Origin: Diadema antillarum | Taxonomy: Eukaryota | Direction: 5' to 3' | NCBI RefSeq assembly: GCF_040938485.1 | Contig: NW_027271554.1 | Span: 1,426,001 to 1,490,000 of the forward strand | DNA length: 64,000 nucleotides | Part shown: one piece after another, positions 25,964-63,453 of the stretch | Layout: the number at the start of each line of letters is the position of its first letter | Position numbering within the stretch: position 1 is the stretch's first letter | Program-made: the position numbers and the translations under genes | The notes under the pieces: model-generated | The model's input: the letters and a program-made list of their open reading frames with translations, nothing else | What the model was told of the DNA's origin: nothing | Databases searched by the model: none

Positions 25964-26315
25964 TATCAGCTTGAAAGGAAGCCGGTGTGGCTCTCTGTCC
26001 TGGTGATCTGGATTCCCTGATTCAAGTCTGCTAGCAGCAGGTTTTTTTTTTCTGCCCTATTTGGCCTAGGCAAAGCACTTACCAATTGTAATCCTCATAG
26101 ATTAGTCCTTTGGAAGGAACTTAAAACTGCTAATCTTGTAGTGGTCACTCCTGAGCATATAGTACTTCCGTAGTGGCCACATTAAATAAATTAAAACCAA
26201 TGAACACCAGATTTCTTTTTGTCAGATTTTGCTATTTTGTCTTTGAATACACTTTTAAAGTTCTAATTGAAAATGTGGTTTTGTTCTTGTGTCTGCATAC
26301 AGAGCGGCTACCGTG

Positions 26316-29012
26316 ATGGCTCAGCCCGTGGCAACCCCGGTTGCCAGTGAGAAGGGACTTGACAGCAGCCAGCTGCTGCAACCGATGCACACCTCCCGGC
26401 GGGGCCTGCAACAGGTGCTGGACCTCTTCCACAATGCCACGCCCAGTCTCAAGCAGCTGCTCCTGCACGAGGCCGACATCATCTACGAATGCCGCGTCTG
26501 CAAGGGCCTCTTCAGGGGCCTCGTCAACTTCATCGAGCACAAGAAGTCCTACTGCAAGATGCGGGCAGGGCTGGACCAGCACTGCTCCACAAAGGTGATG
26601 AGCCTCAACATGAGAGACCTGTACCCCAGTGAGGATGCAGCAGCGCCGCAAGTGGAACCGCAGCCACCAACTGGTTCCCCAGCCACCGAACGCGTCCTCC
26701 CAGAGAGGTCGTCCGGGCAGCCAGTGTTTGTGAACGACATGTCCTCGGGGGTCGGCAACTCCGATGCATTTGTGGTCCTGCGGCCCATCCCTTCCACCAC
26801 AGAGGCGATCGAGCAGCAGGTGGTCCGGTCCGACCACATAGTGAACCATGATGAACTTGAAAAACTCAGCATCTTCACCCACACGCCCGAAGGTGAGGAC
26901 ACCTCAAAGATAGTGGGGGAGATTGCAATACGCCAGGCAACAAAAGGTGCCAAGACAACGAGGATAGAGAAGCGTGCAGCTCTTCACACTATTCTCAAAA
27001 ATGTCAGCGGCAAAACAGTTATGGACAGCAGTGAACTGTCGAGCAATGCAGCCAGCCCTGAGGGACCATCAAGTCCCCCAGGTAGAGGAGCAGAGGTAGG
27101 AGGAAAGGCAACAAGTCCGAACAAAGTGGATGCTGTAATGGCACGCAAGACTAGTCCTCAGCAAGAACCAAAAGAGATGAATGCACAGGGGACGGCAGCA
27201 TGCCAGCCAACTGAGTGCCAGATCTGCAAGAAGAAGTGCAAGAACTGGACAGCACTGGCCTGGCACATGCGCATTCACAAGAGGCCAATATTCAAGTGTT
27301 CCCTGTGTCGATACAGCTCGGCGTCGGTGTACAATCTGAGGCGACATATGCAGACGATGCACCACCTGCCAACTAGGAGGGTTGACGAGCTGCTCAGCAG
27401 GAAGGTGGAGCAGCAGAAGGTCTCCCACGGGGGACGGGAGAAGGAGGGTGCCAAGGAAGGGGAGAGTAGCTCAGTTCCCACTTGCGACATTTGCTTCAAA
27501 ACTTTTGCCAATCGTCGCAATGTCCTGCGACACAAGGAGATCCACCGGCGCGAGCGCCTTACCTCTGACCTCAACCGAGGAGGGACAGTGACGCCGTCCC
27601 GAGAGGAGATTGCCCAGAACAAAGTAATGCAAATCATGGACGAGAAAAACCTCAAGTGTCGGCGCTGTCAGAAGCAGCTGTCAACCATGCGACGTCTTCA
27701 GCAACACTGCTGCAACCACTTTGGCTTCAACCGCTATCGATGCAAATTGTGTCCGTATGAGAACAATGACTACACGCAGATGAGGAGGCACATGATGGGC
27801 AAACATGGCAGGCAGTTCCGCACAATCCACCAAATTTCTGAAGCCATCCGCAACATGAAGGTCGGTATCTGGGTCAATCTTGTGCAGAACAACAACGGCG
27901 CAAGTGCCGACGAGAATGCAAACTCCAGTGTGGGAAAACCAAAGGAGAATAGCGAAACCAAATTCATCAGCCTCAAAACCAAACATGATGCAGCTGTAGC
28001 ACCAAAGATGAGGGAGAATGGGAGTACACCAGATGTCAATGGAGACAGTGGGGATCATGAGGATGATATCTTGATGGATGAAGAAGAGCATAAAGCAAAG
28101 GAAGAAGAGGAGAGTGAAGGAGATAATGATGCTGAAGAGGAGGGGGAAGAGGAAGAAGAAGAGGAGGAGGAGGAAGAAGAAGAAGAAGAAGGAGATGCTG
28201 CAGAAGCCGGAGCAGCAGCAGAAAACAAGAAGGATCAGAGCAAGATTGAGATCAAGGTTGCTCGGTCTCAATCAAACAAGGAAAACAAAGTCGTGCCCAA
28301 AACGCCCACGAAGCAGCATCAGAACACTAACTCCACCAAGGATATTCTCCTGACTCCGCCCAGCAGCAACGGTGCCAGGAAGAGCCCTGAGCCGACGCCC
28401 AGCCGCGATATGCCAGTTCGCCAGGCACGCCTCAACCACCAGAGTGTGTCTCCTCGCAGCCAGCCGGAGAAGGTGCAGGGCGAGCGGCCGCAGCTCGACA
28501 AAACACAGCAGGTGCGACGGGACCTGGGCAAGACCTCAACAGAAAAGCCTCGCTCCATCAAGACGGAGATCGACGAGGAGGATAAGAACGTGTTGGAGTT
28601 GATGATGGACAAGAGGCTTGTCCGCTGCCTGAACTGCAACAAGAGATACCAGTACCTAAGCTCTCTGCAGCGCCATGTTCGCGTCCACCTGCTCCGTGGC
28701 GAGACTGACATGCGGCCATCGCCATCGAAGGATGTGGCCGACGCCTCTGCGAAGCAGCAGGCCATCGAGGCGCTCATCAACACCAGCCTCCTCAAGTGTC
28801 TCAAGTGCAAGAAGCGCTTCGAGAGCGTGAGTTCCCTCAAGCGGCATGTAGCGCGCCACCTGGGCTACAGCACCTTCAAGTGCATGTACTGCGGCTACCT
28901 GTCCCGAAACTACACCTGGTTCAAGCAGCACTTGATGATTAAGCATCCGCAGGAGGTGTCCAACCCCAGTAAAATGGGTAGCCTTATAGGGAGCATGAAA
29001 ACCAAGAAGTAG
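26316..29012 (+). CDS. ZNF800: ZNF800-like C2H2 zinc-finger protein (898 aa, single coding exon)
   Basis: The long ORF 26289-29012 has an in-frame ATG at 26316 in good Kozak context (gtgATGG), just after a pyrimidine-rich acceptor (tgtgtctgcatacag|, exon start 26303). The N-terminal block LLQPMHTSRRGLQQVLDLFHNATPSLKQLLLHEADIIYECRVCKGLFRGLVNFIEHKKSYC matches the recalled ZNF800 signature ([60 protein letters not shown]). It has one C2HC-type finger plus eight C2H2 fingers and a central poly-Glu tract. Confidence 0.92.
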   Translation: MAQPVATPVASEKGLDSSQLLQPMHTSRRGLQQVLDLFHNATPSLKQLLLHEADIIYECRVCKGLFRGLVNFIEHKKSYCKMRAGLDQHCSTKVMSLNMRDLYPSEDAAAPQVEPQPPTGSPATERVLPERSSGQPVFVNDMSSGVGNSDAFVVLRPIPSTTEAIEQQVVRSDHIVNHDELEKLSIFTHTPEGEDTSKIVGEIAIRQATKGAKTTRIEKRAALHTILKNVSGKTVMDSSELSSNAASPEGPSSPPGRGAEVGGKATSPNKVDAVMARKTSPQQEPKEMNAQGTAACQPTECQICKKKCKNWTALAWHMRIHKRPIFKCSLCRYSSASVYNLRRHMQTMHHLPTRRVDELLSRKVEQQKVSHGGREKEGAKEGESSSVPTCDICFKTFANRRNVLRHKEIHRRERLTSDLNRGGTVTPSREEIAQNKVMQIMDEKNLKCRRCQKQLSTMRRLQQHCCNHFGFNRYRCKLCPYENNDYTQMRRHMMGKHGRQFRTIHQISEAIRNMKVGIWVNLVQNNNGASADENANSSVGKPKENSETKFISLKTKHDAAVAPKMRENGSTPDVNGDSGDHEDDILMDEEEHKAKEEEESEGDNDAEEEGEEEEEEEEEEEEEEEGDAAEAGAAAENKKDQSKIEIKVARSQSNKENKVVPKTPTKQHQNTNSTKDILLTPPSSNGARKSPEPTPSRDMPVRQARLNHQSVSPRSQPEKVQGERPQLDKTQQVRRDLGKTSTEKPRSIKTEIDEEDKNVLELMMDKRLVRCLNCNKRYQYLSSLQRHVRVHLLRGETDMRPSPSKDVADASAKQQAIEALINTSLLKCLKCKKRFESVSSLKRHVARHLGYSTFKCMYCGYLSRNYTWFKQHLMIKHPQEVSNPSKMGSLIGSMKTKK

Positions 29013-49892: not shown

Positions 49893-50017
49893 TTATCCCA
49901 TGTTGTCCAGGACAGTCTGTGCAAGCTGCTTGAGCTGCGCCGAGTGAGAAGAGGTCAGAATGGTGTCCACCAGCTTGGGGAGAGACGATTCCCCGAACGC
50001 CGTCCTGAAAGCTTCCG
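49893..50017 (-). CDS. VAC8: Vac8-like terminal coding exon: (S)EAFRTAFGESSLPKLVDTILTSSHSAQLKQLAQTVLDNMG*
   Basis: Strong acceptor ttcttgccatcccctccctacag|; 125 nt, phase 1; stop TAA at 49895-49893. The terminal amphipathic helix resembles the Vac8 C-terminal helix. Confidence 0.8.
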
Positions 50018-50119
50018 CTGTAGGGAGGGGATGGCAAGAAGAAACTTGAAATTAAAGAAATGAAGCAAAAAACATTTTCCTATCAATGAGACAAGAGTAG
50101 ACTGGATACATCAGTTGCA

Positions 50120-51205
50120 ATCATCATTAGCACAATTATCACCATTTATAAAACTTATTACAAACTATAAGCACCACCACGTCTGACATGATCATCACCC
50201 TCTTACCAGCATCACCACAATTTATGTTAATCATCAGCAACATCATTCTCATGACTATCACCATGATAATATCTATTGCCTTAATCATTATCTTCTTCCT
50301 CATCACGTCATCATTATCACCATTATCATATTCATTGTCACCATTAGAATCATCCAACTGTTGACACAGACATTATCGTCTTCATTATCATTGTCATCAC
50401 TGTCACCAGAAACAGAGACTTTCCTATCAATGAGACAAGTACAGATTGGATACATCAGTTGCAACTATCATCATCACCATCAACACCGTCATCATCGCCA
50501 TCATCACTATCACCATATCCTTATCACCATCACCNNNNNNNNNNNNNNNNNNNNNNNNNNNNNNNNNNNNNNNNNNNNNNNNNNNNNNNNNNNNNNNNNN
50601 NNNNNNNNNNNNNNNNNNNNNNNNNNNNNNNNNNNNNNNNNNNNNNNNNNNNNNNNNNNNNNNNNNNNNNNNNNNNNNNNNNNNNNNNNNNNNNNNNNNN
50701 NNNNNNNNNNNNNNNNNNNNNNNNNNNNNNNNNNNNNNNNNNNNNNNNNNNNNNNNNNNNNNNNNNNNNNNNNNNNNNNNNNNNNNNNNNNNNNNNNNNN
50801 NNNNNNNNNNNNNNNNNNNNNNNNNNNNNNNNNNNNNNNNNNNNNNNNNNNNNNNNNNNNNNNNNNNNNNNNNNNNNNNNNNNNNNNNNNNNNNNNNNNN
50901 NNNNNATGNNNNNNNNNNNNNNNNNNNNNNNNNNNNNNNNNNNNNNNNNNNNNNNNNNNNNNNNNNNNNNNNNNNNNNNNNNNNNNNNNNNNNNNNNNNN
51001 NNNNNNNNNNNNNNNNNNNNNNNNNNNNNNNNNNNNNNNNNNNNNNNNNNNNNNNNNNNNNNNNNNNNNNNNNNNNNNNNNNNNNNNNNNNNNNNNNNNN
51101 NNNNNNNNNNNNNNNNNNNNNNNNNNNNNNNNNNNNNNNNNNATGACCATCACCATCAGCAATCACCATCATCACCATCACCATTATCATCACTATCATC
51201 ATTCT
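50120..51205. repeat. (CAT/CAC)n low-complexity intronic region enclosing N-gap 50535-51142
   Basis: Degenerate CAT repeats on both sides of the gap. Confidence 0.85.
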
Positions 51206-51244
51206 CTCTATCACCTCTGAGCAATGCATGTATGAGTGTCTTAC

Positions 51245-51370
51245 ACTTGAGGAGGTGGACAATGGTCCAGAGAGAGATGTGGATGAAGCCGGCGTCCGAG
51301 CTGCGGAGGAAACGGGTCAGGTACTTCTGGAGCATGGAGATGTTGGCAGATATCAGCTCGGGGGGCAGGC
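51245..51370 (-). CDS. VAC8: Vac8-like exon: (S)LPPELISANISMLQKYLTRFLRSSDAGFIHISLWTIVHLLK
   Basis: Acceptor atcttttgccag| and donor AAGT|gtaaga; 126 nt, phase 1 to 1. Resembles the Vac8 motif YLxRFLxSxDxTFQHIAVWTIVQLLE (recalled). Confidence 0.88.
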
Positions 51371-52729
51371 CTGGCAAAAGATACAAAATATGAAAGCTGT
51401 CAATGGAAAAGTTTCACTGGTACAAGTATGTTAGGAAGCATCATTAAGTGTCTCAACATGGCTGGAAAGGAACTGTGTAAGATACAAATATGTGACCCGC
51501 TACAACAAAAGGATCTGAAAGTCGAAGGAGGTGGATTTTCTGAAAATGACATGACATTATTCCCTTACTCTTCTGCCGTAATTTCATATATACAATGTAA
51601 CACAACTCATAAAATTCATCGGTTGCGGAGATATTGATGATTTTATGAGAGCACGTCGAGCGGTCTAGGAAATCAGCATTTTGAGAAAACCGCCTTCAAA
51701 GTTTCTTTCTGATGCAATCGTGATCAAGGGGAGGTAAGACAGTTTACACCTCTTGACAATAGGTCTGCTCATAGCAACCTCCACAATGTTCAATCAAGCT
51801 TAGCACCAGCAGTTTACACACGACCAATCAGCAAACAGGATGCCACGCACTGACCAATAAGATCACTCCCTCGTTGCGAGGGGCAGAGTCTATCTGCAGC
51901 GTTAAATAAAAATCTTCGGCCAAGTTTCTGTTCCGTTGCATGTTGGAAAATCATGGCTCAGAAAAACATCAATTTCTCACCTTTCCTTTGATCATTTAAG
52001 CTTCAAAATTTCGGTAGATGATAGACAAAACATTAGACTACATTATCCTGAAAATAGAAATTCAATTATTTTGACAAATTCTGACGATCTGACTTCAAAC
52101 TCGATTTTCTCTGCTCAGCCATCAGCAACTTTCAGATCCTTTTGTCGTGGTGGGTCACATATCATCATCACTATCATCATCCTCAAGTCATCATCATTAT
52201 CGCTATTATCATTACTACAACTACTCCCCTTACTATTGCCTCCATTACCATTAATACTACTATATCATTGCTCTGATCATTTTCATCATCATAACTGTGA
52301 CATCAAGTATATTTCAGCTTTAGATTTAAGATACAGATTGTCAATAGCTTTCGTCCGTTTCCTCATCCCCATAAGCAAGAACATGCGCGGAGCACTGGGC
52401 TGAACGGACATGGTGCCAGCTGCATAGTGACTCGAGAAGGAGAATTAATCAACTGTTTTATTGTCATATTGTCACAAGCCTACCACAATGAACAAGGAGT
52501 CAAAAGTGCATAACCTAAATCACCTCCTCTCTCACAGATATGCATTACACACAAATACACAAAATGGGACAATGAACAATATACAGGATATGTTATTTAT
52601 GGAAATGGAAACGTGTGAAACAATAAAAGTATTTACAGGAAAATGACCTTAGTGTAAAAATAGTAAAGTGCACTTGGACTGTGTTGAAGAAATCAGTATG
52701 CTTGGTTCAGTCGCTGTTAGCAGTATTCT

Positions 52730-53075
52730 TTTGAGAACAAATGTGACAAAAGTGTCATTGTTCTTGTTTAAAGATGTTTGGAAACCATGAGGGGAAATGA
52801 GTCTCTGTTTAGAATGATGATGTCCATGAACATAGGCAAGGCTAAGCCGACTGAATCATCTGGGTTGTTTAAACAAAGTGTGGGAATGTCCTGAAGGTGA
52901 GGGGAATATTTTTGTGTTTTTACGACACCTTGAAAACAAAAGGGTCTCTGTTCAGAATGATAATGTCCATGAACGTGAGAAAGGCTATGCCCACTGAATC
53001 ATTCACAATGCAGCTTGTTGAAAAAGGTGAGTCAATGTCACAAAGGTGAGAAGAATATTATTGTGTTTGTTCTTA
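52730..53075. repeat. Diverged ~142-bp tandem duplication
   Basis: gtctctgtt.agaatgat.atgtccatgaac....aaggcta.gcc.actgaatcat at 52801 and 52943. Confidence 0.7.
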
Positions 53076-53911
53076 TTTCTTCAAATTCTAGTCATTTCTT
53101 TGACAGCATGCAGTAGCATATTTTAAAACCTTTGTGTGCCCATGTGCTCAGCGTAACTTGCCAGGCATTTTCATTGTCATTTAGTAAGCCATCAAAACTT
53201 AGCTTTATAATTGTAAAGTTAGCAAAGTGGATGGTGATTTGATTTGGGTTTATAGGTGGTTGGATGGTGTCGTATTTGTGCTGAGAAGTGGCCATTTTGG
53301 GTCAGGGAGCCTGGCAAGAGGTTAGGGTTGGGATGGGTGGAGGATGGGTTTGATGGGGGAGGGTCGATGTGGATGTAGTGGGCTAAATAGATGTTGGGGT
53401 TGTTAAGGGGGATGGGTAATGCCATGACTGAGCAGGGTGGTGGTGGTGGTTGGGGACAATGGTGATTGGGTGAGGTGGTAGATGGATAATGTGAGTTTTG
53501 GGTTGGGTAATGAGTTGACAAACAGTTGAATTGTGCTGGATCAGGCTGATCTTGCAGAGGTTGGGATAATGGGAGAGGATGAGGTTTGACAGACAAAGGC
53601 CTCATTTTAACGCCCAGGATCAGGGTAACTTTGAAGACATTATCTGGCAGAATGATCTGGCAGGTGGGGAGAAGGCTAACACAAACACCTGCTCACCACA
53701 GAACAGCTAACGAGGGCAAGTTTTGAGGTAAAGACGTCACAGTCAGTTCATCATCATCACATTCACCTGTTTACTTGACAGGGCAACCAACATCGTCATC
53801 TTGTGGTTACCTGAAGGATGGTTTGGCCTTATTTACCCAGGATAGCCTCCCTTTGAAGCTATCAGCACCCTTCCCTGCAGGCAGCTGCTAGTATCAGTAC
53901 CCTTCCTTTAA

Positions 53912-53996
53912 CCCACTGAAGACTGGTCCCGAGTATACTCGGGCAATTGTCTATGGGAAATGGATGTTACAGCAAAATCAGCCCGTCCTCAGTGGA
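53912..53996 (+). mobile_element. 85-bp piggyBac-like micro-MITE
   Basis: TTAA|CCCACTGAAGAC...cccgagtatactcggg...GTCCTCAGTGGA|TTAA. Confidence 0.75.
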
Positions 53997-54349
53997 TTAA
54001 CCAACGCTTAACACTGGCGATGGTCCCAGACTGGCGAAAGTCACGGATGGACTGGTAACTTTTCAAGAATCGCAACAGTTACTGGTCCGACATGACCGTT
54101 ACAACAAAAAATTATGATAACATCATTGTTGAGCCAGTCAAACCAACAGAACAAGACCGGTAAATTTTAGGATCCCACCAGTAAAAAAATGGAAAAACTG
54201 GGTATCTACTGGTCCAACAAAGATGGGTTGTACTAGTAGAAAAGGGGTTCTAGTGTGCAGCCCTGCTTTACTGCAACAATCATACCAACATCATGGTCAG
54301 CATGAGTATTGCAGGTAGATAAAAAGCCCGAAACTCAGTGATGTATGGA

Positions 54350-54634
54350 TAGGGCAGGAATTAAAGTTGGGATCTCTTCTTGTTTGAGACTCCCATAACT
54401 CTCTCTATCTCTGTACGGCATCCAACTATTCTATTGTAAGTTCGATGTATTGAGTGGCCCATATTCCTACAAGCTTGTCTTCTATATGGGTCCCTCTTTT
54501 CCATTAACGCAATTATTTTGAACGATCAGTTCCATATATGCAATTCTTTTGTTGTAATACAATGTGTTTTTTTTAATATGTATCGATAACAAACGTGTGT
54601 TATTGGAAATAAGATTTATTTGAATTGAATTGAA
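54350..54634 (+). mobile_element. Probable 3' end of a non-LTR retroelement with (TGAAT)n tail
   Basis: UTR-like sequence ending aaataagatttatttgaattgaattgaa; no RT ORF recognisable. Confidence 0.35.
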
Positions 54635-55734
54635 CAGTATTCCCTCTTCCAGTACATAAATCTAGAACTACACGTTTAGAAGAGTTACCATCCCTATTAG
54701 CCCATCTTGGGAGTTTGAGTCAGAATTTGGCAACTAAGACGTAGACTGTCCATGAACCTCGGCTGAAAACAAAGAATGAAAGGGGCACACAAGCAAAAGA
54801 CTGGGTGTGGCACACAAAACCAGCTCATCATAACCTACCAGTCAAGGATACAAACTTTGATGACCCATTTTACTCTGTTTTCCGATTCTCATCTCTTATC
54901 ATATCTCTGCACATCATTGGCACTGTTTTTTTCTTTTTTTTACTTTAAGAACAAAACAAGAAGCGGTTGATAATATCAACCGACTGAAATTAGATAGTCA
55001 AGAGTGTGTACTGATCGCCCACTTATTTGTTTCGTATGTGTCAATCATGCATATCAAAAGGTTTGCAGCGAAAAACAAATATTGCTGCTCCATTGTCAGC
55101 ATTACAGTAGACGGCATGCTATTGTTAAGATAGAGAAATATGGGTAATATCTGTCAATACAATGAATAACTCCCCCTCCCCCCCCCCCCATAAAAAAAAA
55201 AAAGAGAGGAAAAAACTACTATTGGCCTATTGTGCAATTTTGTAAAACTTGAGAATGATCCAGGCATCTTTGTGAAAGGTGCCAGGAATGTGAAATCAAA
55301 GCCTAGAATAAGACCTTGACATGTAACAGGGGTTTAATAAACACCATGATTATTACTCAGGTTTTTACTTAATTAACCCCTGTGTTTAAAACACAAATGT
55401 GTGATGTCTGCTGTTATCATGTCTGCTAAAGCACAGACTTTTCCTACTGATTAAGATGTCCCAAAACTCGTTGAAATGTGAGAGAATGATGCCAGACAAA
55501 TGATGCATGGGTGACAGTGCGTTAGTGGAGATGCAGTGCACTGGAGGGTATTTACAATGGTCTTCTTTTCTTTTCTTCTCGAGTCACTACACAAGTCCTG
55601 TCCAGTGCAGAGCGCAGGATCTGGCTTTGGTGTTGAAAGTCTCCAGATCATTTACAATGGTGCAACATGCGCAAGGTGCAGCCAACAGCATGTTGCATGA
55701 TTTGTGAATACCTTTGATTTCAGTTTATTTATTT

Positions 55735-55895
55735 TATATATTTTTTATATTCTTATATATGTTTTTGTTCATTTATCTTTTATTTTTTCTTCATATTCCA
55801 ATGTTCTCACATCTACTCATGTAAAAAGTCTGTAATTCAGCCTGCGGGCTGCTAGAGATGTTGCTTAATAAAAAATACCTTTTCATTCATTCATT
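55735..55895 (+). mobile_element. Probable L2/CR1-type LINE or SINE 3' end
   Basis: Terminal stem-loop cagcctgcgggctg (55838-55851), AATAAA at 55867, then a (CATT)n tail. Confidence 0.5.
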
Positions 55896-56281
55896 TAATG
55901 TCACAAGCTTAAACCTGTGCAATATTTGTTACAAAAATAGGTCGATGAACTATCATGTCAGCTGGAAAACTCTTTGATCCCTCTTTCATCAGCTGTACAG
56001 ACGACCATGTGAATCAAAGCAACTAATTGGGTTACTCTATAATCTTCCAGTGGAAGATGTGTAGTGCAGTTTGGTTTCTCATTGCTGTGCACTTTTTGCA
56101 CTCAGGTGCTTTTTGGCACAAAAAAAAAAAAAAAAAAAAAATGAAGAAGGCACTCATGACTCATGTCAGCATTTAGGGTTGGCTACATTCTTGTACCAAT
56201 TCTATAATATTCAATTATTTCACCCCGTCATATTACAATAGTCTTGATGTGGGACTGTTACATCTTTAATGAAACTTTTAA

Positions 56282-56366
56282 CCCGTTGAGGACGAGTCCC
56301 GAGTATACTCGGGCAAGTGCTTATGGGAAATGTGTGTTGTAGCAAAATCAGCCCGTACTCAACAGG
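56282..56366 (+). mobile_element. 85-bp piggyBac-like micro-MITE
   Basis: TTAA|CCCGTTGAGGACG...CGTACTCAACAGG|TTAA; internal palindrome cccgagtatactcggg. Confidence 0.8.
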
Positions 56367-56403
56367 TTAATGGGATTGTCTACTCAATAGTACATAATAT
56401 TAA

Positions 56404-56491
56404 CCCATAGAGGACAAGCAGACTTGATTTGCTATAACATGCATTTCCCATTGACACCTCTCTGGTATACTCAAGAGTAGCCTTCAATGGG
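56404..56491 (-). mobile_element. 88-bp piggyBac-like micro-MITE, inverted relative to 56282-56366
   Basis: TTAA|CCCATAGAGG ... CCTTCAATGGG|TTAA; the interior (gatttgctataac..atttccca) is the reverse complement of the neighbouring copy. Confidence 0.72.
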
Positions 56492-56647
56492 TTAAACAGA
56501 GTTTAGGGAGACATTGGTCTGATGTCACAGATATAATACAACAAATTGAAACTAAAGTGCACTAGCCCTAGAAGGGTAAGGGTGACAGTTCACATGAACT
56601 CTTATAACTTCACAGCCCAAGTGTGGTGCCCCCTTTTGGTCACTCAC

Positions 56648-56782
56648 TGAATAACGCCAGCTGCCCGATGGTTCCAGCGCTGTTGTACTGCACATCCCGA
56701 CTGGGCGAGCACGCGGCCAGGTTGACCAGACGACTGAAGACCCGTCCGTCACCAATCCCCAGGAGCACTCGCTTGGCCTCGT
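56648..56782 (-). CDS. VAC8: Vac8-like exon: (D)EAKRVLLGIGDGRVFSRLVNLAACSPSRDVQYNSAGTIGQLALF
   Basis: Acceptor gctgtgttccag| and donor TTCA|gtgagt; 135 nt, phase 1 to 1. The correct frame is not in the ORF track. Resembles Vac8 SPSxEVQGNSAAALGNLS (recalled). Confidence 0.87.
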
Positions 56783-57745
56783 CTGGAACACAGCGCAAAC
56801 AATTGAAAATTTTTATGATCAGGATGGTTTATCGCAACTGATTGGCTAATTGCCCAATGTCAACATAAATGAACATCAATCATTGGGTGTTTGAGTAGCA
56901 GCCATGATAGAGAAATCCTGAGCACACATACTTGGTTAACACTCAAACCAACAAGAGTACAAGAGTATGTATGCCTGTGATATTTCATTATAGCTCAAAC
57001 ACTGAATAATAGGTGTTCATTTACATCAATGTGGGGCAATTTGTCAATCAGCTCCAATAAGAACAACTCGACACAAGAATTACTACCGGTAATTATTCAA
57101 AATTAGGACGGTTTATCGGACAACATGGCAAATTCACAGCATCATGAGAAATTACATAGTCTGTAATTACAAATGTACATGGTCATACATAGCTTTGACC
57201 ATAATTTTAAAATAGTGACATAAGTACATATCAATAAAGGAGCACGTTTGAACAGGGAACCCAAGTCTTACAATACAAATGGCAAGCCTGTAGATAGATA
57301 ATTAGGAATGTAATATGTATATAATGAATTGACACGGTGACACAAGTACGTGTACAGGGCAGTCAAACTTACTCAGTTCTACAGGTCTCATGGCAAACTC
57401 AATCCTATGATCTACACGACTTTGCCGTAGTGTAACTTTCATCTCTTCACATATTGCGCATATTGCACAAACTGTTAATCTATTGATTCGCACAATTTGC
57501 AATCGTGTGAAAACTATGTACTGCACAATGCCCACAGCGTAGCAAAGTGCAAAGATGCATCCATGGACTGACTTGTTACTGACTCAAATATCATCAAATC
57601 ACCTTAATTTTCATCTCTTCAAATGAGACCACAAATTGACGTTGCAGTTACAGGAAAGAGAGATATTGTAGTTACAGAATTCTTCTTCTGCTTCATGATC
57701 ACTGAAAGAACTTTGTCCTGTGAGGTAATTTATTTGACAGTCTCT

Positions 57746-58207
57746 GGCTGCATTTATCAACTTTCCCCTGTTTAAACGGCTTTCAAAAGCTGTTTCCAAA
57801 GCCCTTTCCAAAGCCGTTTCCAAAGCCCTTTAGAAACGGCTTCCAAAATAGTTGCGTTTATCAACTCTTTGCAAACACAATAACTGGCCTGTCACTGCAC
57901 AGCTGCATTGTGCAATTCCACCCGGGGAGAAGAGGTCATTAAGGCGTGCATTGTTCGTAACTGCAGTATAATACCACAAAGCCGTTTCAAAACAGCTTTG
58001 CGTTTATCAACTTCAAAAGGCTTTTACAAACAGGTTTCTGAAAACCTGTTTAGGAAACCTGTTTGGAAAGCCACAAATTTGCGGCTTTCGAAAAGGCTTT
58101 CCGAAAGGGCTTTCAAAACAGCTTTGCGTTTATCAACTCGTAAAAATTCCTTGAAAGCTGTTTGGAAAACCTGTTTCTGCTCAGAAAAAGAGTTGATAAA
58201 CGCACCC
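57746..58207. mobile_element. PIF/Harbinger-like MITE with internal short repeats
   Basis: GGCTGCATTTATCAACTT ... GAGTTGATAAACGCACCC (15/18 inverted match), TCT on both flanks; internal gcgtttatcaact and tttccaaagcc repeats. Confidence 0.75.
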
Positions 58208-58375
58208 TCTGTTGTACCAATTGACTGTTTTCGCACAGGCGGATCACCAATCTGTTCGTTCTCTGTGGACAGGGAAAAAGAATCTTGTTTGGGGGCACTG
58301 AAGACTCTTGGAGAATTGTGGGAGGAATGGGTCAACAATCATGGGAGTTGCATTGGCCTTCACCGGCCACCTTAC

Positions 58376-58490
58376 CGTGTCCAGCAATGATGGCCAGGGC
58401 TGCGGTCACTTCCGTCTGGACGCTAGCTGGAGAGGTGGACTCAAGGAACACGGTGATTAGTCCGTCAAGGGCACCCGAAGTGAGAATCAT
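58376..58490 (-). CDS. VAC8: Vac8-like exon: MILTSGALDGLITVFLESTSPASVQTEVTAALAIIAGH(D)
   Basis: Acceptor tgtttgaatgtcag| and donor CACG|gtaagg; 115 nt, phase 0 to 1. Resembles Vac8 VQSEMTACVAVLALSDE (recalled). Confidence 0.87.
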
Positions 58491-58598
58491 CTGACATTCA
58501 AACAAATAGATCAACATTCAACACCATTTATGAAATCTGTGTCTTTAATATATGCAACACACATTATGTCTGCCTCAGAGTTATGTATGAGCCTTCTC

Positions 58599-58880
58599 TT
58601 ATTACCTCCGCCACGCAGGATATGTTTTTGCTTGTGTTGGTTTGTTTGTTTGTCTGGGTGCAAAATAACTCAAAAAGTTGAGAACGGATTTAGATGAAAC
58701 CGGCAGGAAAAATTGATAATGACACAAGGAATAGATGATTAAATTTTGCCAGTGATCCAAGAATTTTTATGAATTTTTAAGAGACTTTTTATTTCTTGGC
58801 ATATATGGTCAATGAACTTGGGAGTTCAAGCTGCGCATATTTGAAGTTTGTGTACAGGCGCTAAAGTGCATGTTCTGCTC
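58599..58880 (+). mobile_element. 3'-truncated Helentron/DINE-like element
   Basis: ttattacctccgcca start, (gttt)n microsatellite, and body colinear with 59078-59420. Confidence 0.72.
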
Positions 58881-58898
58881 AAGGCTCTGCAACCTTAC

Positions 58899-59024
58899 CG
58901 ATGTCTTACTCCCGGCTGCCAGGTTGCGTAACGTTCCGGCGGCGTGGCAGTGAGCGTCCCACAGCATTGGCTGCCTCAGCACCACCGCAATCTCCTCCAG
59001 GAATCCGTGCTCCAAGATGGGGAT
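58899..59024 (-). CDS. VAC8: Vac8-like exon: IPILEHGFLEEIAVVLRQPMLWDAHCHAAGTLRNLAAGSKTS
   Basis: Acceptor cttcctctggtcccag| and donor TCG|gtaagg; 126 nt, phase 0 to 0, in frame with neighbours. Resembles Vac8 SPIIESGFL...QCHAISTLRNLAAS (recalled). Confidence 0.88.
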
Positions 59025-59077
59025 CTGGGACCAGAGGAAGAAGGTGCACAAAAACCAGATCATCCCCAAATTATTAC

Positions 59078-59628
59078 TTTATTACCTCCGCCAAGGGAGG
59101 AGGTTATGTTTTCGTTACCGTTGGTTTGTTTGTTAGTTCGTTCATTAGTTAGTTAGTTAGTTACTTAGTTAGTTTGTTAGTTAGTTAGTTTGTCCGTGTG
59201 CAAAATAACTCAAAAAGTAGTTGACAGATTGGGATGAAACTTGCAGGAAAGGTTGAGAATGACACAAGTAACAAACAATTAACTTTTGGTAGTGATCCGA
59301 GGATTTTGGGGGAATTTATGAAGGATTTTTGATATTTTGGCAGGTAGGGTCAATGAACTTGGGAGTTCAGGCTGCGCGTATTTGAGGTTTGCCTGCGCGC
59401 ACTAAAGAGCGTGCTCTAGTTTCTGCTGGGGTGAGGCGCACTGTGCAGCTGAGGGTTTATGACGTAACAAAGGCTTCAATATTGGGAAATCAGGCAACTT
59501 TTCAGCACACAATGCTACAAGTATGTATGGGTGAAAATCACTGATATCTCTATGGAAGAACAAGATCAGTGGTGAAAATGATTTGCATGCTTGGCGGAGG
59601 TCTGCGCTCTCAGAGTGCTTCTCTAGTT
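59078..59628 (+). mobile_element. Apparently complete Helentron/DINE-1-like element (HINE)
   Basis: 5' subTIR acctccgccaag, adjacent inverted ggaggt, (gtta/gttt)n microsatellite, 3' subTIR cttggcggaggt, 3' hairpin gcgctctcagagtgc, and end tagtt followed by a T-run. Confidence 0.82.
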
Positions 59629-59899
59629 ACTTTTTTTTTCCTTTTTTTTTTTTGCTGGATCAGAATTTTGCTTCTAACAATGGAAGTCTCTAGTGAGTTG
59701 CATCCATAAAAAAAAAGGAGAACTTGCCAAACACGCCTACAGTGTACTTGCTCCAGCCTGTGTCATAGGGACCACTAGAAGAGCAAAAAGAGCTAAAAAC
59801 ACACTTTTGCCTGCAGCAAACAACCATTCTAACAATTGATGCTACATTGTTCTTTTAACTCACTAAAGCAGGCCTGAATGCACACGTTTCTGTACTTAA

Positions 59900-60262
59900 A
59901 GGGATAGTATTGGTGGAGATGAGGATTGGGCTTTTAACTTTTTGCCAGATACCACAAACCACTTCTGAAATAGTACAGAACATACCATCTATACAAGGAA
60001 TTCAAAGTTTATTTTGGAACGGCTGAGGCATCCAAAAACAAAGTAAAATAAAGAGATCGTAATAAAATGTGGGTCCCATCTTTCATGAGGATCGCTCTGT
60101 TTTTGATATCTCAGCCATCTCAAGACCAATTTTCATCAAATAAACATTGAATTCCTCTTGGAATTACATGTTCTTTCATAATTGATTTAAGAGGTTTCTC
60201 GTATCTCATACAAAAATATTAGAAACCCGAAGATGGGTCTCAACCAAAACTATACAATCCCT
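59900..60262. mobile_element. Kolobok-like TTAA MITE
   Basis: TTAA|AGGGAT ... ATCCCT|TTAA; homologous to 29764-30014. Confidence 0.8.
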
Positions 60263-60488
60263 TTAACTTGAGCGTTCATGACAAATCCTTCCTTGTCTAT
60301 TTCAATCACAACATAACTCTTCTGTGTACACATTTTCACACTGCCTTAACAAGTTTTCCCCATTGTCACCAATATGACTAAATAATAATGCTAATAAATA
60401 ACACTGTATGTAATGCTTCATACACTTAAGAATGAAGAGGACAATGAACTTTGAGTCACATGACCACCAGTTGAGAGAATACCATTAC

Positions 60489-60622
60489 CTCATTGAGTCT
60501 GTGGATGGACAAATTGCGTAACGCGGCGATGGCAGCTGACAGCGTCTCCTTTGAGCTGTTCCTGATGATGGACAGTAGAGGGGGTAATCCGTTGAGCTTC
60601 ACAATGGCTACCTGATTCTCAT
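60489..60622 (-). CDS. VAC8: Vac8-like armadillo-repeat protein, first exon visible in window: (D)ENQVAIVKLNGLPPLLSIIRNSSKETLSAAIAALRNLSIHRLNE
   Basis: Acceptor ttttctctgacag|AT and donor GAG|gtaatg; 134 nt, phase 1 to 0. ARM motif AALRNLSIH..NE resembles fungal Vac8 (ACVRNVSIHPQNE, recalled). The symbol means 'Vac8-like'. Confidence 0.88.
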
Positions 60623-63453
60623 CTGTCAGAGAAAAAAAAAATAAGCATATATGAAACATTGTTGTTTAATCAGATACTTGTATGAAAATTTAGACAATAT
60701 CTCAGACTTCATAAGTTTGTTCAATATCTGAGTGCATAAAACTGTATAGTGTATTAAATGTTTCCTGAGAGACATTTCCCTTCATATCTTCTTTGTTTAT
60801 TTGCAGGAAAACTGCTGAAAATCCTGGAGAATTGCCATACTGGACATTGCAATTACCATGCATCATCTTCCAAATACTGCCATATCACAATAATTCAATG
60901 ACAACAATGCAAGGAGGCATGTCAATCAAAGCATCAAAATCAAGAGGCAGGGGGTTCAGAAAAGCTATCTGGGAGGATTTTGCATGTTAGATGCATTTCA
61001 ATTGGTAGAAAGAGTATTCACAAAATCAGGGAAGCTTTTAAATCCTTTAATCAGTGTGTGAAGTGTTTTGGTTTTGTTGATTTTTTTTGTGGTTTATTTT
61101 TTTGAGGAGCCTCCTATACAATCAGGGATCTTCCCACTAACAGCAATGTCATTCAAACTACAATGTATATGCTACCAGAATGTCAGTAAGATGATGCCAA
61201 GGGAATAACAGATTTAGGATCAATGTCATATATGTGAATGTACATACAGTGTGACTAAAAGAGAGTGGAAGCTCTCCAATGTAGGTCCAGCATTTTCCCT
61301 CAAACAAATAATCCCTCTTTCATTACGGTTGGGAAGATGTAAGTAAACCCAGTGGAGCGTTGCTTCAATGAAAGTCAGTGAAACACAAACCAAACGTCAG
61401 CGTAAAATTTTTCGGCAAATTAGCACAACTGGGACAGACACTAAACACAGGGAGCAGAGTGACAGTGAGTCACCAAGACATGGTTGTCCTCTTGGGGTCC
61501 ACAAATGAGTTGTCTACATCTTGGCTTGTCACATGACTGTGACATTGATTGCTTTATATCTTCATAAACTTGTTACTGGCGTGCCCTTATTTCATAGGAA
61601 AGTTAATAGGTATATCAATAAAATTTTCCAAGAATCTGTTCCAGATATCATGCTCTCTCTAACACTCAACTGCAGACTTCAGAAACACATTACATCCTTC
61701 TCACATTACATCACCTGCTTGTAGACCAACAATTCAACAAGTTTTTTTTTTTATCTACAGACTTGTCTTTTTGTGTAAACAAACAAACAAACAAACAAAC
61801 CGACAGACAAATCCAACGTACATGTGGAGTCTTTACAGGTTATCATTCATTTTTATTGTGTTGTTTCGTTAAGTTTTATTGCCAGGTATAAGTTGTGGTT
61901 CAAAACTTGTCTCGAGTCTGCTGCACTGGTCTTGATTGATGTAATATATAAGATGGAAATGTGCATAATTTAATTGATAAGAACTAGAGTTCATCAATTT
62001 TTCACTGAAGTTTCACTTTAACAAAAAAATCACTGCGGGTTATAGAACTTCAATCTGCTTTCACTACTAATCACTATGTCTTCCACAGTTGCCTAAAAGG
62101 TAAACTAACAGGGCCGAATGAAACAAAACAAAACATACAAAGACTTCATTTTCAATATGAGAACAAATACACTTTATATATTGAAAAAACGAAATGTATA
62201 TGATTTATAGCAGAAATTCACACAATACATTCAATTCTTTGTTAAACTGTTTTTGGTTTTTCAAACTCTTTCATCACATATCATCAGGTCTCAGTTAGCT
62301 GCGAGTCTGGCTTGGAAGGAAGGTCACTTGGCTACTCAAGATCCATATCAGCGATTCTTGTGCCGGGAGTCTCACGCGCCCACGATAGCATCGATGAGTC
62401 AATTTCCCTGAAAGTGCTATGTTACGTGCAAAATGTAGTCTTGTCCCGTAAGGAATCGCAAGGAATCCAACGAAAGTCATCCCATAGTGTCATCCGACAC
62501 TGCTATCAAGTTATATCAATTAGCACCTTTATCTGCCAAGATGCGTTGTAATGAGTCAAGATATACAGCGTTGTACATTCTAGCCTGAACACATGGAGAA
62601 GACAATTTGAACTCATGATAGACGTTTAAATTGAAAAAACAGATATTGAATTAAAGCTTATTATCATGTCCTGGTCTGTAGAAGCAGGTAAAGGAATTTA
62701 TGATTAAGTCTTGATGGTAGGCTACCCTGCTCAATGTAATTACTGTGAAGTCTGGCATTGATACCGCGACTAAAGAGTTGATTTAATAAAAGCCTGTGAG
62801 TCACTGCGATATCAGTACCAAATATCCATGCTTTCTCCAGTCACCGCAAATCGAACCCGACAATGTGTCCCACAGACACGAAGACACAATGCTAGCGATC
62901 GCTGCACATCAGATGAAACTGAGCATCATCATATCTGTAGTTCCCCCTGCTCACTCCCCCATGCTCCAATGGGGCCAACACATGTAGTGCAATCACAGCT
63001 GTAATTTATAACACGTAAAGATGATTACAATTCCAAAATTGTGCCATCTGTACTTTGGTACTCTAAATGTTCACACAAGGGTACATCTTGTTTATTTTGC
63101 CATGTCCCATTCATCAAAATTTCCTCAAAACAACAAGCTCTGTTCATGATTGTTGGATAGAAGTTTAACCCTTTGTATGATTTGCATGCCAAATGGCTCA
63201 GAAAAACCCTATAGCATATTTCACACTGTCCAAAGTCCCTGGCACAGAAATGGTTTAAGGGAAACCCCACTCCTTGCTGGCGTAGACAAGTTTCATAATA
63301 GATAAGTAAGAATACAGTCATACAAATAAAGAGTGACAAAGGTTTTACGTTGAAATGGTCAAGAAATATAAAAGAAGGTTGCAAAGTCTCTTGTGTTTTC
63401 AGAAAACAGTGCTACTGGTTAATATCACACATGCTGCTCAGGAAAAGAGACTA

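What the first reader, a model, noticed from the sequence alone, without database searches (positions are those of the whole stretch)
49893..60622. Fungal-type Vac8 armadillo protein encoded as an intron-containing animal gene
Six exons join in frame with canonical GT-AG sites to give about 250 aa: DENQVAIVKLNGLPPLL...AALRNLSIHRLNEIPILEHGFL...CHAAGTLRNLAAG...VQTEVTAALAIIAGHDEAKRVLL...VQYNSAGTIGQLA...KYLTRFLRSSDAGFIHISLWTIVHLL...LKQLAQTVLDNMG*. This follows, repeat by repeat, the last ARM repeats and C-terminal helix of fungal Vac8 as I recall them, including the Vac8-characteristic SIHxxNExPI, CHAxxTLRNLAA and FxHIxxWTIVxLL motifs. It looks much more like Vac8 than like importin-alpha or beta-catenin. 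In yeast Vac8 organises vacuole inheritance (Vac17), nucleus-vacuole junctions (Nvj1) and tethering of the autophagosome assembly site (Atg13). A clear one-to-one vertebrate orthologue is not established. Inference: an ancestral opisthokont lysosome/vacuole tethering scaffold was retained in this invertebrate and could serve an uncharacterised lysosome/yolk-granule contact-site or autophagy system. The acidic low-complexity linker before the fungal C-terminal helix appears absent here.
Basis: partly seen in the sequence, partly recalled or inferred. Interest (0 to 1): 0.72.

Follow-up and report, generated by a model that had tools for sequence, protein, structure and literature searches.

The report
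Sea urchin Vac8 orthologue, last six exons
The window holds the last six exons of a real, intron-containing sea-urchin gene that is a true relative of the yeast vacuole scaffold Vac8; the gene is already in public annotation, so it is ordinary, apart from showing that many invertebrates keep a closer Vac8 relative than the ARMC3 protein usually cited for animals.

Summary
Observation confirmed. Six minus-strand exons (60622..49893) join in frame at canonical GT-AG sites. I moved one junction: exon E ends at 51245 and exon F starts at 50017. The result is 252 aa, 100% identical and gapless to residues 300-551 of a 551-aa public Diadema antillarum protein named "uncharacterized protein". The S. 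purpuratus orthologue (83% identical) is named "vacuolar protein 8". The N stretch lies entirely inside the E-F intron, and no residue is missing there compared with orthologues.

The full protein matches yeast Vac8 end to end (324 bits, E 1e-95). The next natural proteins are ODAD2/ARMC4 at 89 bits and importin-alpha at 78 bits. The predicted fold matches Vac8 crystal structures best. The partner-binding Asn ladder is invariant. In a tree, animal copies (sponges, lophotrochozoans, echinoderms, hemichordates, amphioxus) form one clade beside the fungal clade.

A spliced contig from a related species joins exons A-D at the predicted sites, with 20 synonymous against 3 non-synonymous differences.

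Differences from fungal Vac8: no Gly2 myristoylation site but a longer N-terminal Cys string, and no acidic C-terminal insert.

Lysosomal function is inferred only. ARMC3 could not be placed in the tree.

Verdict: a new member of a known, already annotated family; moderate-low interest.

The parts
60489..60622 (-). Exon A (134 nt). It encodes residues ~299-343 of the 551-aa protein, an ARM repeat ending in the motif NLSIHRLNE, and holds the Arg-Asn pair equivalent to yeast R317/N318.
   Evidence: AG/GT sites. Pfam Arm E 1e-8. Aligns to yeast Vac8 chain positions 276-317, E 1e-11. A spliced contig of run X14 joins 60489 to 59024.
58899..59024 (-). Exon B (126 nt), carrying the ARM repeat with CHAAGTLRNLAAG.
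   Evidence: Splice sites. Only Vac8 chains hit in the PDB, positions 320-357. X14 contig joints at both ends.
58376..58490 (-). Exon C (115 nt).
   Evidence: Splice sites. 100% match to P0159. The X14 contig piece covers 58378-58490, and the 7 unaligned letters equal the 5+2 nt expected at the predicted C/D junction.
56648..56782 (-). Exon D (135 nt), containing the motif VQYNSAGTIGQL.
   Evidence: Splice sites. Weak Pfam Arm match. 69% identical to Ptychodera P0113 by tblastn. X14 contig piece 56647-56777.
51245..51370 (-). Exon E (126 nt), carrying the Vac8-specific motif FIHISLWTIVHLLK. The donor was moved to 51245.
   Evidence: Only Vac8 chains hit in the PDB, positions 457-483. Donor AAGT|GTAAGA. 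Gapless identity to P0159.
49893..50017 (-). Exon F (125 nt including the TAA stop), encoding the last helices and the C-terminal helix LKQLAQTVLDNMG. The acceptor was moved to 50017.
   Evidence: Polypyrimidine tract plus AG at 50019-50018. Colinear with all animal orthologues. The model has a helix at residues 537-550 with block pLDDT ~94-95.
50535..51142 (.). N stretch inside the E-F intron. It is not coding according to the orthologue comparison.
   Evidence: N runs. Flanking CAT-type microsatellites. No indel at the E/F junction against orthologues. The letters were not looked up.

Best explanation
This is the 3' part (last 6 of about 13 coding exons) of the Diadema antillarum orthologue of fungal Vac8. 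The protein has 551 aa. It has a short N-terminal helix, a disordered string of six cysteines, an H1 helix, and about 12 armadillo repeats that form one superhelix. Shown here: the exon structure, the orthology-grade similarity to Vac8, the Vac8-like fold, conservation of the Asn/Arg ladder that in yeast grips extended partner peptides, purifying selection, and a spliced transcript in a relative. Inferred: the protein is held on a membrane by S-palmitoylation of the Cys string. There is no Gly2, so no myristate; the amphipathic N-terminal helix may give the first membrane contact. Also inferred: it works as an adaptor that recruits partners through its groove. The endolysosomal membrane is the most likely site by analogy with yeast. 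Its partners must differ from Nvj1 and Vac17, which are restricted to yeasts. My sub-confidences are: identity about 0.95, lipid anchor about 0.7, lysosomal site about 0.45.
For: Six exons join in frame with GT-AG sites and give 252 aa identical to P0159 residues 300-551. P0159 against the PDB: yeast Vac8 scores 324 bits, E 1.4e-95, in one stretch (31-512 on 11-487); the next natural proteins are ARMC4/ODAD2 at 89 bits and importin-alpha at 78 bits. The AlphaFold model has pLDDT 90.7 and pTM 0.84. Its best PDB folds are Vac8 7ycj, 6kbn, 6kbm and 5xjg (E 1e-24 to 1e-25, 37-39% identity over ~505 columns); beta-catenin scores E 3e-15 at 16-18% identity. With hemichordate and amphioxus queries, invertebrate proteins named 'vacuolar protein 8(-like)' come first and fungal Vac8 follows directly, at 34-47% identity over 82-98% of the query. 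In the tree, animals form one clade (98) and fungi one clade (99), and the animal topology follows the species tree. Columns H212, N250, R293/N294, N335 and R376/N377 are invariant across 35 animal and fungal sequences, and R334 is nearly invariant. They correspond to yeast H196, N234, N277 and R317/N318, which bind Vac17 (PMC10161063). The H1 motif YEPLL..ERE.V..LL.YL is shared with fungi. A Cys string of 5-7 Cys is present in all deuterostome invertebrate copies. A spliced 2536-nt contig in run X14 joins exons A-B-C-D at the predicted sites. Of 23 listed differences from it, 20 are synonymous.
Against: There is no Gly2, so the fungal myristoyl-plus-palmitoyl anchor is not fully kept. The N-terminus lies outside the window and rests on a public gene model that has at least one local frame error elsewhere. 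No RNA run of this species was listed, and run X14 is only guessed to be RNA. The E-F junction has no transcript evidence. Nvj1 and Vac17 have no homologues outside yeasts (for Cryptococcus), so yeast functions cannot simply be transferred. Localisation, lipidation and partners were not testable. ARMC3 sequences could not be obtained, so the tree lacks that family.
Confidence: 0.68

Rival explanations
1. It is a true Vac8 orthologue, but in animals it works on a membrane other than the lysosome. Candidates are Golgi, plasma membrane, or cortical, yolk or secretory granules. There it would act as a palmitoylated tether with a new client set, as the acylated ARM protein ARO does on apicomplexan rhoptries.
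For: The anchor has changed: Gly2 is lost, the Cys string is expanded, and lophotrochozoans carry a ~40-aa N-terminal extension. The acidic C-terminal insert is lost. The yeast clients Nvj1 and Vac17 are absent outside yeasts. A paper on the palmitoylated ARM protein TgARO, which tethers rhoptries, turned up in the search on its title and abstract only (PMC3567180, listed, not read).
Against: The groove ladder and the H1 helix are conserved with fungi, which argues for a retained binding mode. No localisation data exist either way.
Confidence: 0.25
2. It belongs to another armadillo family, such as ARMC3 (called the mammalian Vac8 homologue in the literature), ODAD2/ARMC4, importin-alpha or beta-catenin, and only resembles Vac8.
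For: Atlas models of ARMC3 clusters superpose on this protein with TM 0.72-0.80 by query, and ARMC3 scores 0.95 by language-model features. No ARMC3 sequence was available for a direct test.
Against: The protein has 551 aa and matches only ARM/HEAT-type Pfam families. It has no EDR1_CTR1_ARMC3_pept domain and no IBB domain. ODAD2 scores 89 bits and importin-alpha 78 bits, against 324 for Vac8. Vac8 clusters score higher in the Atlas (TM 0.86-0.87, features 0.97). The C-terminal motif hits only Vac8 in the PDB. A published analysis reports vac8p, armc3, armc4 and importin-alpha as separate monophyletic clades (PMC3141441).
Confidence: 0.03
3. It is an inactive gene copy or an annotation artefact that is not expressed.
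For: No RNA run of this species was listed. The public model carries a compensated frame error in an upstream exon.
Against: The frame is intact through six exons with consensus splice sites. A spliced contig from a related species has a 20:3 synonymous to non-synonymous ratio against the window. Identity to S. purpuratus is 83% in the window-encoded part and 86% over the full length.
Confidence: 0.02
4. It is fungal contamination or a recent horizontal transfer from a fungus.
For: High similarity to fungal Vac8.
Against: The gene spans 63 kb with long animal-type introns on a 1.8-Mb contig. Orthologues occur across animal phyla, and the gene tree mirrors animal phylogeny and lies outside the fungal clade.
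Confidence: 0.01

Closest known systems
Fungal Vac8 (S. cerevisiae Vac8p; PDB 5XJG, 6KBM, 6KBN, 7YCJ)
   Same: End-to-end colinear sequence at 37-39% identity to the yeast crystal chains and 39-44% to other fungal Vac8. It shares the H1 helix, the ~12-ARM superhelix, an invariant Asn/Arg groove ladder, the F.HI..WT...LL motif, a terminal helix and an N-terminal Cys cluster.
   Different: It has no Gly2 myristoylation site and 5-7 Cys instead of 3. It lacks the 9-18-residue acidic insert before the last helix. It is an intron-rich 63-kb gene. The yeast partners Nvj1 and Vac17 are not expected in animals.
Invertebrate proteins annotated 'vacuolar protein 8(-like)' (for example S. purpuratus, Asterias, Lingula, Mizuhopecten, Branchiostoma, sponges)
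   Same: Same orthologous clade: 83% identity to S. purpuratus in the window-encoded part, the same N-terminal Cys string, and the same C-terminus.
   Different: Nothing of substance. The D. antillarum entry is merely named 'uncharacterized protein', and its model has a local frame error upstream of the window.
ARMC3 (called the mammalian Vac8 homologue/orthologue in recent papers)
   Same: Armadillo superhelix of similar length; Atlas TM 0.72-0.80 by query. Linked to autophagy in the literature.
   Different: The Atlas ARMC3 clusters range from 506 to 895 aa. The clusters of 740 aa and more carry a C-terminal EDR1_CTR1_ARMC3_pept domain, which is absent here.
ODAD2/ARMC4, importin-alpha, beta-catenin
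   Same: They share ARM repeats.
   Different: Scores are 4-fold lower: 78-89 bits for ODAD2 and importin-alpha against 324 for Vac8. Structural identity is 16-18% for beta-catenin and ODAD2. There is no IBB domain, and their alignments cover only part of the protein.

Membership tests
Vac8 | Full-length, colinear best match to characterised Vac8 rather than to other ARM families | tested here: met
   Yeast Vac8 scores 324 bits, E 1.4e-95, in one stretch (31-512 on 11-487). The next natural proteins score 89 and 78 bits. Fungal Vac8 follows directly after the animal orthologues in two database searches.
Vac8 | H1 helix followed by a ~12-repeat armadillo superhelix | tested here: met
   The model has pLDDT 90.7, with H1 at residues 35-50 and helices through 550. 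Its best PDB folds are the four Vac8 entries, TM 0.77-0.82 by target.
Vac8 | N-terminal Gly2 for myristoylation | tested here: not met
   P0159 starts MENCLDY. No deuterostome or lophotrochozoan copy has Gly2; the Ephydatia sponge and 9 of 10 fungi checked do. The N-terminus lies outside the window and was read from the public model.
Vac8 | N-terminal cysteine cluster for palmitoylation | tested here: met
   P0159 has six Cys in its first 17 residues (LCCCCGC plus C4); echinoderms, hemichordates and amphioxus have 5-7. The modification itself is not testable here.
Vac8 | Groove residues that bind partner peptides (yeast H196, N234, N277, R317/N318) | tested here: met
   H212, N250, R293/N294, N335 and R376/N377 are invariant, and R334 is nearly invariant, in 35 sequences. 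The alignment to the yeast chain shows RN in CIRNISIH against ALRNLSIH. Residue roles come from PMC10161063.
Vac8 | C-terminal F.HIALWT..QLL motif and terminal helix | tested here: met
   Exon E hits only Vac8 in the PDB. The terminal [IL]..LA..VL helix aligns across animals and fungi, and the fungal acidic insert is absent in all animals.
Vac8 | Monophyly with fungal Vac8 against other ARM families | tested here: inconclusive
   Animal and fungal clades are each supported and are separated from seven of eight unnamed generic ARM outgroups by a long branch (99). No named ARMC3, ODAD2, importin or catenin sequences could be included.
Vac8 | Vacuole/lysosome localisation and binding of Atg13-type partners | not testable with these tools
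   This needs localisation and interaction experiments.
ARMC3 | C-terminal EDR1_CTR1_ARMC3_pept domain (PF14381) on a long protein (740-895 aa in the Atlas clusters that carry it) | tested here: not met
   P0159 has 551 aa and matches only ARM/HEAT-type Pfam families. Atlas ARMC3 clusters of 740 aa and more carry PF14381.
Importin-alpha | N-terminal IBB domain and best match to karyopherin-alpha | tested here: not met
   No IBB match. Importin-alpha scores 72-78 bits and covers only about residues 100-336 (best hit 101-336; most 143-336).

The most novel reading that the evidence does not exclude
Sponges, lophotrochozoans, echinoderms, hemichordates and amphioxus keep the true one-to-one orthologue of fungal Vac8. 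In this reading ARMC3, now cited as the metazoan Vac8 orthologue, is a separate ancient ARM family. The true orthologue was lost or diverged beyond recognition in vertebrates and ecdysozoans. In bilaterians its anchor changed from myristoyl plus 3 Cys to a myristate-free string of 5-7 Cys. If it still sits on lysosome-related organelles, sea-urchin eggs would give a tractable animal system for Vac8-type organelle tethering.
Probability: 0.4. Interest if true: 0.55.

Novelty: new member of a known kind. Interest (0 to 1): 0.33.

Why it matters
The gene itself is ordinary and already annotated. Its value is comparative. Reviews say Vac8 has no obvious mammalian orthologue (PMC4951168), and recent papers treat ARMC3 as the metazoan orthologue. 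Many invertebrates nevertheless carry a protein 35-47% identical to fungal Vac8 over nearly its whole length (34-47% with the hemichordate and amphioxus queries; 39-44% for the Diadema protein), with the partner-binding ladder intact. That points to an ancestral opisthokont scaffold with a patchy pattern of loss in animals. It also offers experimentally accessible animals (sea urchin, starfish, amphioxus, oyster) in which to ask what a Vac8-type adaptor does without Nvj1 or Vac17.

Tried and rejected
1. My first E/F join (51247|50004) was in frame, but it was rejected because it left a 5-residue gap against orthologues.
2. The exhaustive representative search with the 44-aa exon A was swamped by multi-repeat ARM proteins. 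Only re-scoring the 150 hits with the spliced protein in a script picked out the orthologue P0113.
3. I looked for ARMC3 among those hits by Pfam scanning 20 proteins. None carried PF14381; they were BTB-, U-box-, kinase-, SAM- and HET-ARM fusions.
4. Cluster names for 10 hits were uninformative, because 'Vacuolar protein 8' is applied automatically even to algal ARM proteins.
5. A region-restricted search with the C-terminal 112 aa found only six ambulacrarian proteins.
6. No RNA runs were listed for this species. Three unknown-type runs of the same species label covered only intron repeats.
7. Searches of earlier findings returned nothing.
8. A bacterial promoter/terminator scan of the 3' flank was irrelevant to a eukaryotic gene.
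9. Exon D alone gave no PDB hit.
10. The paper behind the ARMC3-Vac8 claim (PMC8726738) is not held.

Full report
**The observation**

On the minus strand, six open segments carry canonical AG acceptors and GT donors. Joined, they read in one frame to a TAA stop at 49895-49893. My first choice for the last junction (51247|50004) was in frame, but it left a 5-residue gap against the nearest relative then in hand. The sequence shows a better donor two bases downstream (AAGT|GTAAGA, exon E ends at 51245). It also shows a better acceptor 13 bases upstream, after a long pyrimidine tract (…ccctccctacag|CG, exon F starts at 50017).

With these sites the exons are:
- A: 60622-60489
- B: 59024-58899
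- C: 58490-58376
- D: 56782-56648
- E: 51370-51245
- F: 50017-49893

The introns are 1464, 408, 1593, 5277 and 1227 nt. The product is 252 aa. It is 100% identical, without a gap, to residues 300-551 (the C-terminal end) of the public 551-aa protein P0159, named "uncharacterized protein [Diadema antillarum]". A tblastn of P0159 on the window finds only these six exons.

**The N stretch**

The N runs (50535-50905 and 50909-51142) lie wholly inside the E-F intron. They are 103 nt from the exon E donor and 518 nt from the exon F acceptor. CAT-type microsatellites flank them on both sides. Exon E ends after the first base of a codon and exon F supplies the other two (T+CG, Ser). Across this join the protein has the same length as in S. 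purpuratus, starfish, hemichordates, Lingula, scallop and sponges. No coding letters therefore need to be hidden there.

When I fetched the public record that encodes P0159 to see the whole gene, a script reported that the record has no run of N in the locus and that the intron has the same length. The window's N stretch is therefore more likely masked than a true gap. I did not read, print or use the letters under it. A tblastn of P0159 on the whole locus, run before I knew this, passed over that stretch and listed nothing there; I draw no conclusion from that. There is no transcript evidence for the E-F join.

**Transcript evidence**

No RNA run of this species was listed. I laid four runs of uncertain kind on 56600-60700. 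One run from another organism (X14, guessed to be RNA) has a single 2536-nt contig whose pieces lie exactly on exons A, B, C and D. Its joints are 60489/59024 and 58899/58490, and the skipped ends read GT..AG on the minus strand. There is a third joint near 58378/56777. The seven unaligned letters there equal the 2+5 nt expected at the predicted C/D junction.

Of the 23 listed base differences between that contig and the window, 20 are synonymous and 3 are not. That is the pattern of a gene under purifying selection. The three runs carrying the window's species label covered only repeated parts of the introns.

**What it is**

Single exons already pointed to Vac8. Exon A aligns to yeast Vac8 chain positions 276-317 (E 1e-11). 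Exon B aligns to 320-357 and exon E to 457-483. For B and E, Vac8 chains were the only PDB hits.

The full protein P0159 matches yeast Vac8 at 324 bits, E 1.4e-95, in one stretch (residues 31-512 on 11-487). The next natural proteins are ARMC4/ODAD2 (89 bits) and importin-alpha (78 bits). An AlphaFold model built on 35 orthologues is confident (pLDDT 90.7, pTM 0.84). Its only poorly modelled part is residues 11-30, the Cys string. The best PDB folds are the four Vac8 entries (E 1e-24 to 1e-25, 37-39% identity over about 505 columns). Beta-catenin follows at E 3e-15 with 16-18% identity. Pfam finds only ARM/HEAT-type families, with no IBB domain and no ARMC3 C-terminal domain.

**Relatives**

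I searched with the hemichordate orthologue and with the amphioxus orthologue. Both lists show the same order. First come echinoderms, hemichordates, Lingula, molluscs, an annelid, a nemertean, amphioxus and sponges; many of these are already named "vacuolar protein 8" or "vacuolar protein 8-like". Fungal Vac8 follows directly, at 34-47% identity over 82-98% of the query. No vertebrate, tunicate, arthropod, nematode or cnidarian protein appeared in the best 120 of either list. That is an observation about the lists, not proof of absence.

In a tree of 24 animal and 14 fungal sequences with eight generic ARM outgroups, animals form one clade (support 98) and fungi one clade (99). The animal part follows the species tree: sponges; amphioxus; lophotrochozoans; and hemichordates plus echinoderms, with Diadema next to S. 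purpuratus. This fits vertical descent from the opisthokont ancestor and rules out fungal contamination. So does the gene structure, about 13 coding exons over 63 kb on a 1.8-Mb contig. The outgroups were unnamed, and no ARMC3 sequence could be obtained, so the formal test against ARMC3 is still open. Two proxies point to separate families:
- Atlas ARMC3 clusters are structurally similar but score lower than Vac8 clusters, and the longer ones (740 aa and more) carry PF14381.
- A published analysis reports vac8p, armc3, armc4 and importin-alpha as separate monophyletic clades (PMC3141441).

**How it probably works**

Across the 35 aligned animal and fungal proteins, the residues H212, N250, R293/N294, N335 and R376/N377 are invariant, and R334 is nearly invariant. 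They correspond to yeast H196, N234, N277 and R317/N318, which hold the extended Vac17 peptide; mutating N234 or N277 abolishes that binding (PMC10161063). The H1 segment (YEPLL..ERE.V..LL.YL) is also shared. The peptide-in-groove adaptor mode, and probably H1-controlled self-association, are therefore most likely retained.

The membrane anchor differs. Nine of ten fungal copies checked start MG followed by three Cys. Echinoderm, hemichordate and amphioxus copies start M[DE]..L[DE]Y, followed by a string of 5-7 Cys, and have no Gly2. One sponge keeps MGSC. Lophotrochozoans carry an extra ~40-residue N-terminal extension. I infer palmitoylation-only anchoring.

At the C-terminus all animal copies lack the 9-18-residue acidic insert of fungi but keep the final [IL]..LA..VL helix.

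Lysosomal location and the partners are inference only. Nvj1 has no homologue outside Saccharomycetes, and Cryptococcus lacks Nvj1, Vac17, Atg13 and Tco89 homologues according to PMC12734321. The client set in animals must therefore be different.

**Novelty**

The gene is in public annotation. Invertebrate "vacuolar protein 8" entries appear in papers only as list items, for example a coral KEGG table and a snail QTL list. I found no paper that discusses this animal clade. Reviews state that Vac8 has no obvious mammalian orthologue, and recent work calls ARMC3 the mammalian or metazoan orthologue.

Two points are unresolved:
- Two Atlas clusters whose commonest phylum is Chordata: one of 574 aa named "putative Vacuolar protein 8", and one of 579 aa with only a generic armadillo-repeat name.
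- A chicken locus named "vacuolar protein 8-like".

**Verdict**

This is a new member of a known, already annotated family. It has some comparative interest, and its function is untested.

Noticed in passing
window 26289-29012 (+): A 907-aa uninterrupted ORF in the most GC-rich part of the window (GC 0.525). It has several C2H2 zinc fingers and a long acidic Glu-rich run, and looks like a single-exon zinc-finger gene.
   Followed up: partly
L001 31597-31725 (upstream exon of the same gene, outside the window): The public model P0159 reads TFGCNATRLAP where S. purpuratus has DIRVQRNAAGA, a nearly invariant ARM motif. The conserved motif is present in the DNA in a neighbouring frame. This suggests two compensating one-base indels, possibly at the C runs, so probably an assembly error that corrupts about 11 residues of the model.
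   Followed up: partly
L001 22982-24829 (intron of the same gene, outside the window): A 615-aa piggyBac-type transposase gene (DDE_Tnp_1_7) is called inside one of the long upstream introns.
   Followed up: no
window 59888-60298; also 57011-57147 and 58655-58791: These intron stretches are covered at very high summed depth by many short contigs in all four runs laid, including the run from the other species. They are probably interspersed repeats.
   Followed up: no
window 50535-51142: The public record of the same contig has no N run at the corresponding place, and the intron has the same length. The window's N stretch therefore looks masked rather than unsequenced. The letters were not read.
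   Followed up: no
window 59120-59190, 50468-50507, 51146-51202: A (GTTA)n microsatellite lies in intron A-B, and CAT-type microsatellites lie on both sides of the N stretch.
   Followed up: no
not in the window (Atlas clusters; chicken LOC421690): Two Atlas clusters labelled Chordata are close to this protein by fold: 574 aa named 'putative Vacuolar protein 8', and 579 aa with a generic armadillo-repeat name. A chicken locus is named 'vacuolar protein 8-like'. Whether these are vertebrate orthologues or amphioxus or misnamed proteins was not resolved.
   Followed up: partly
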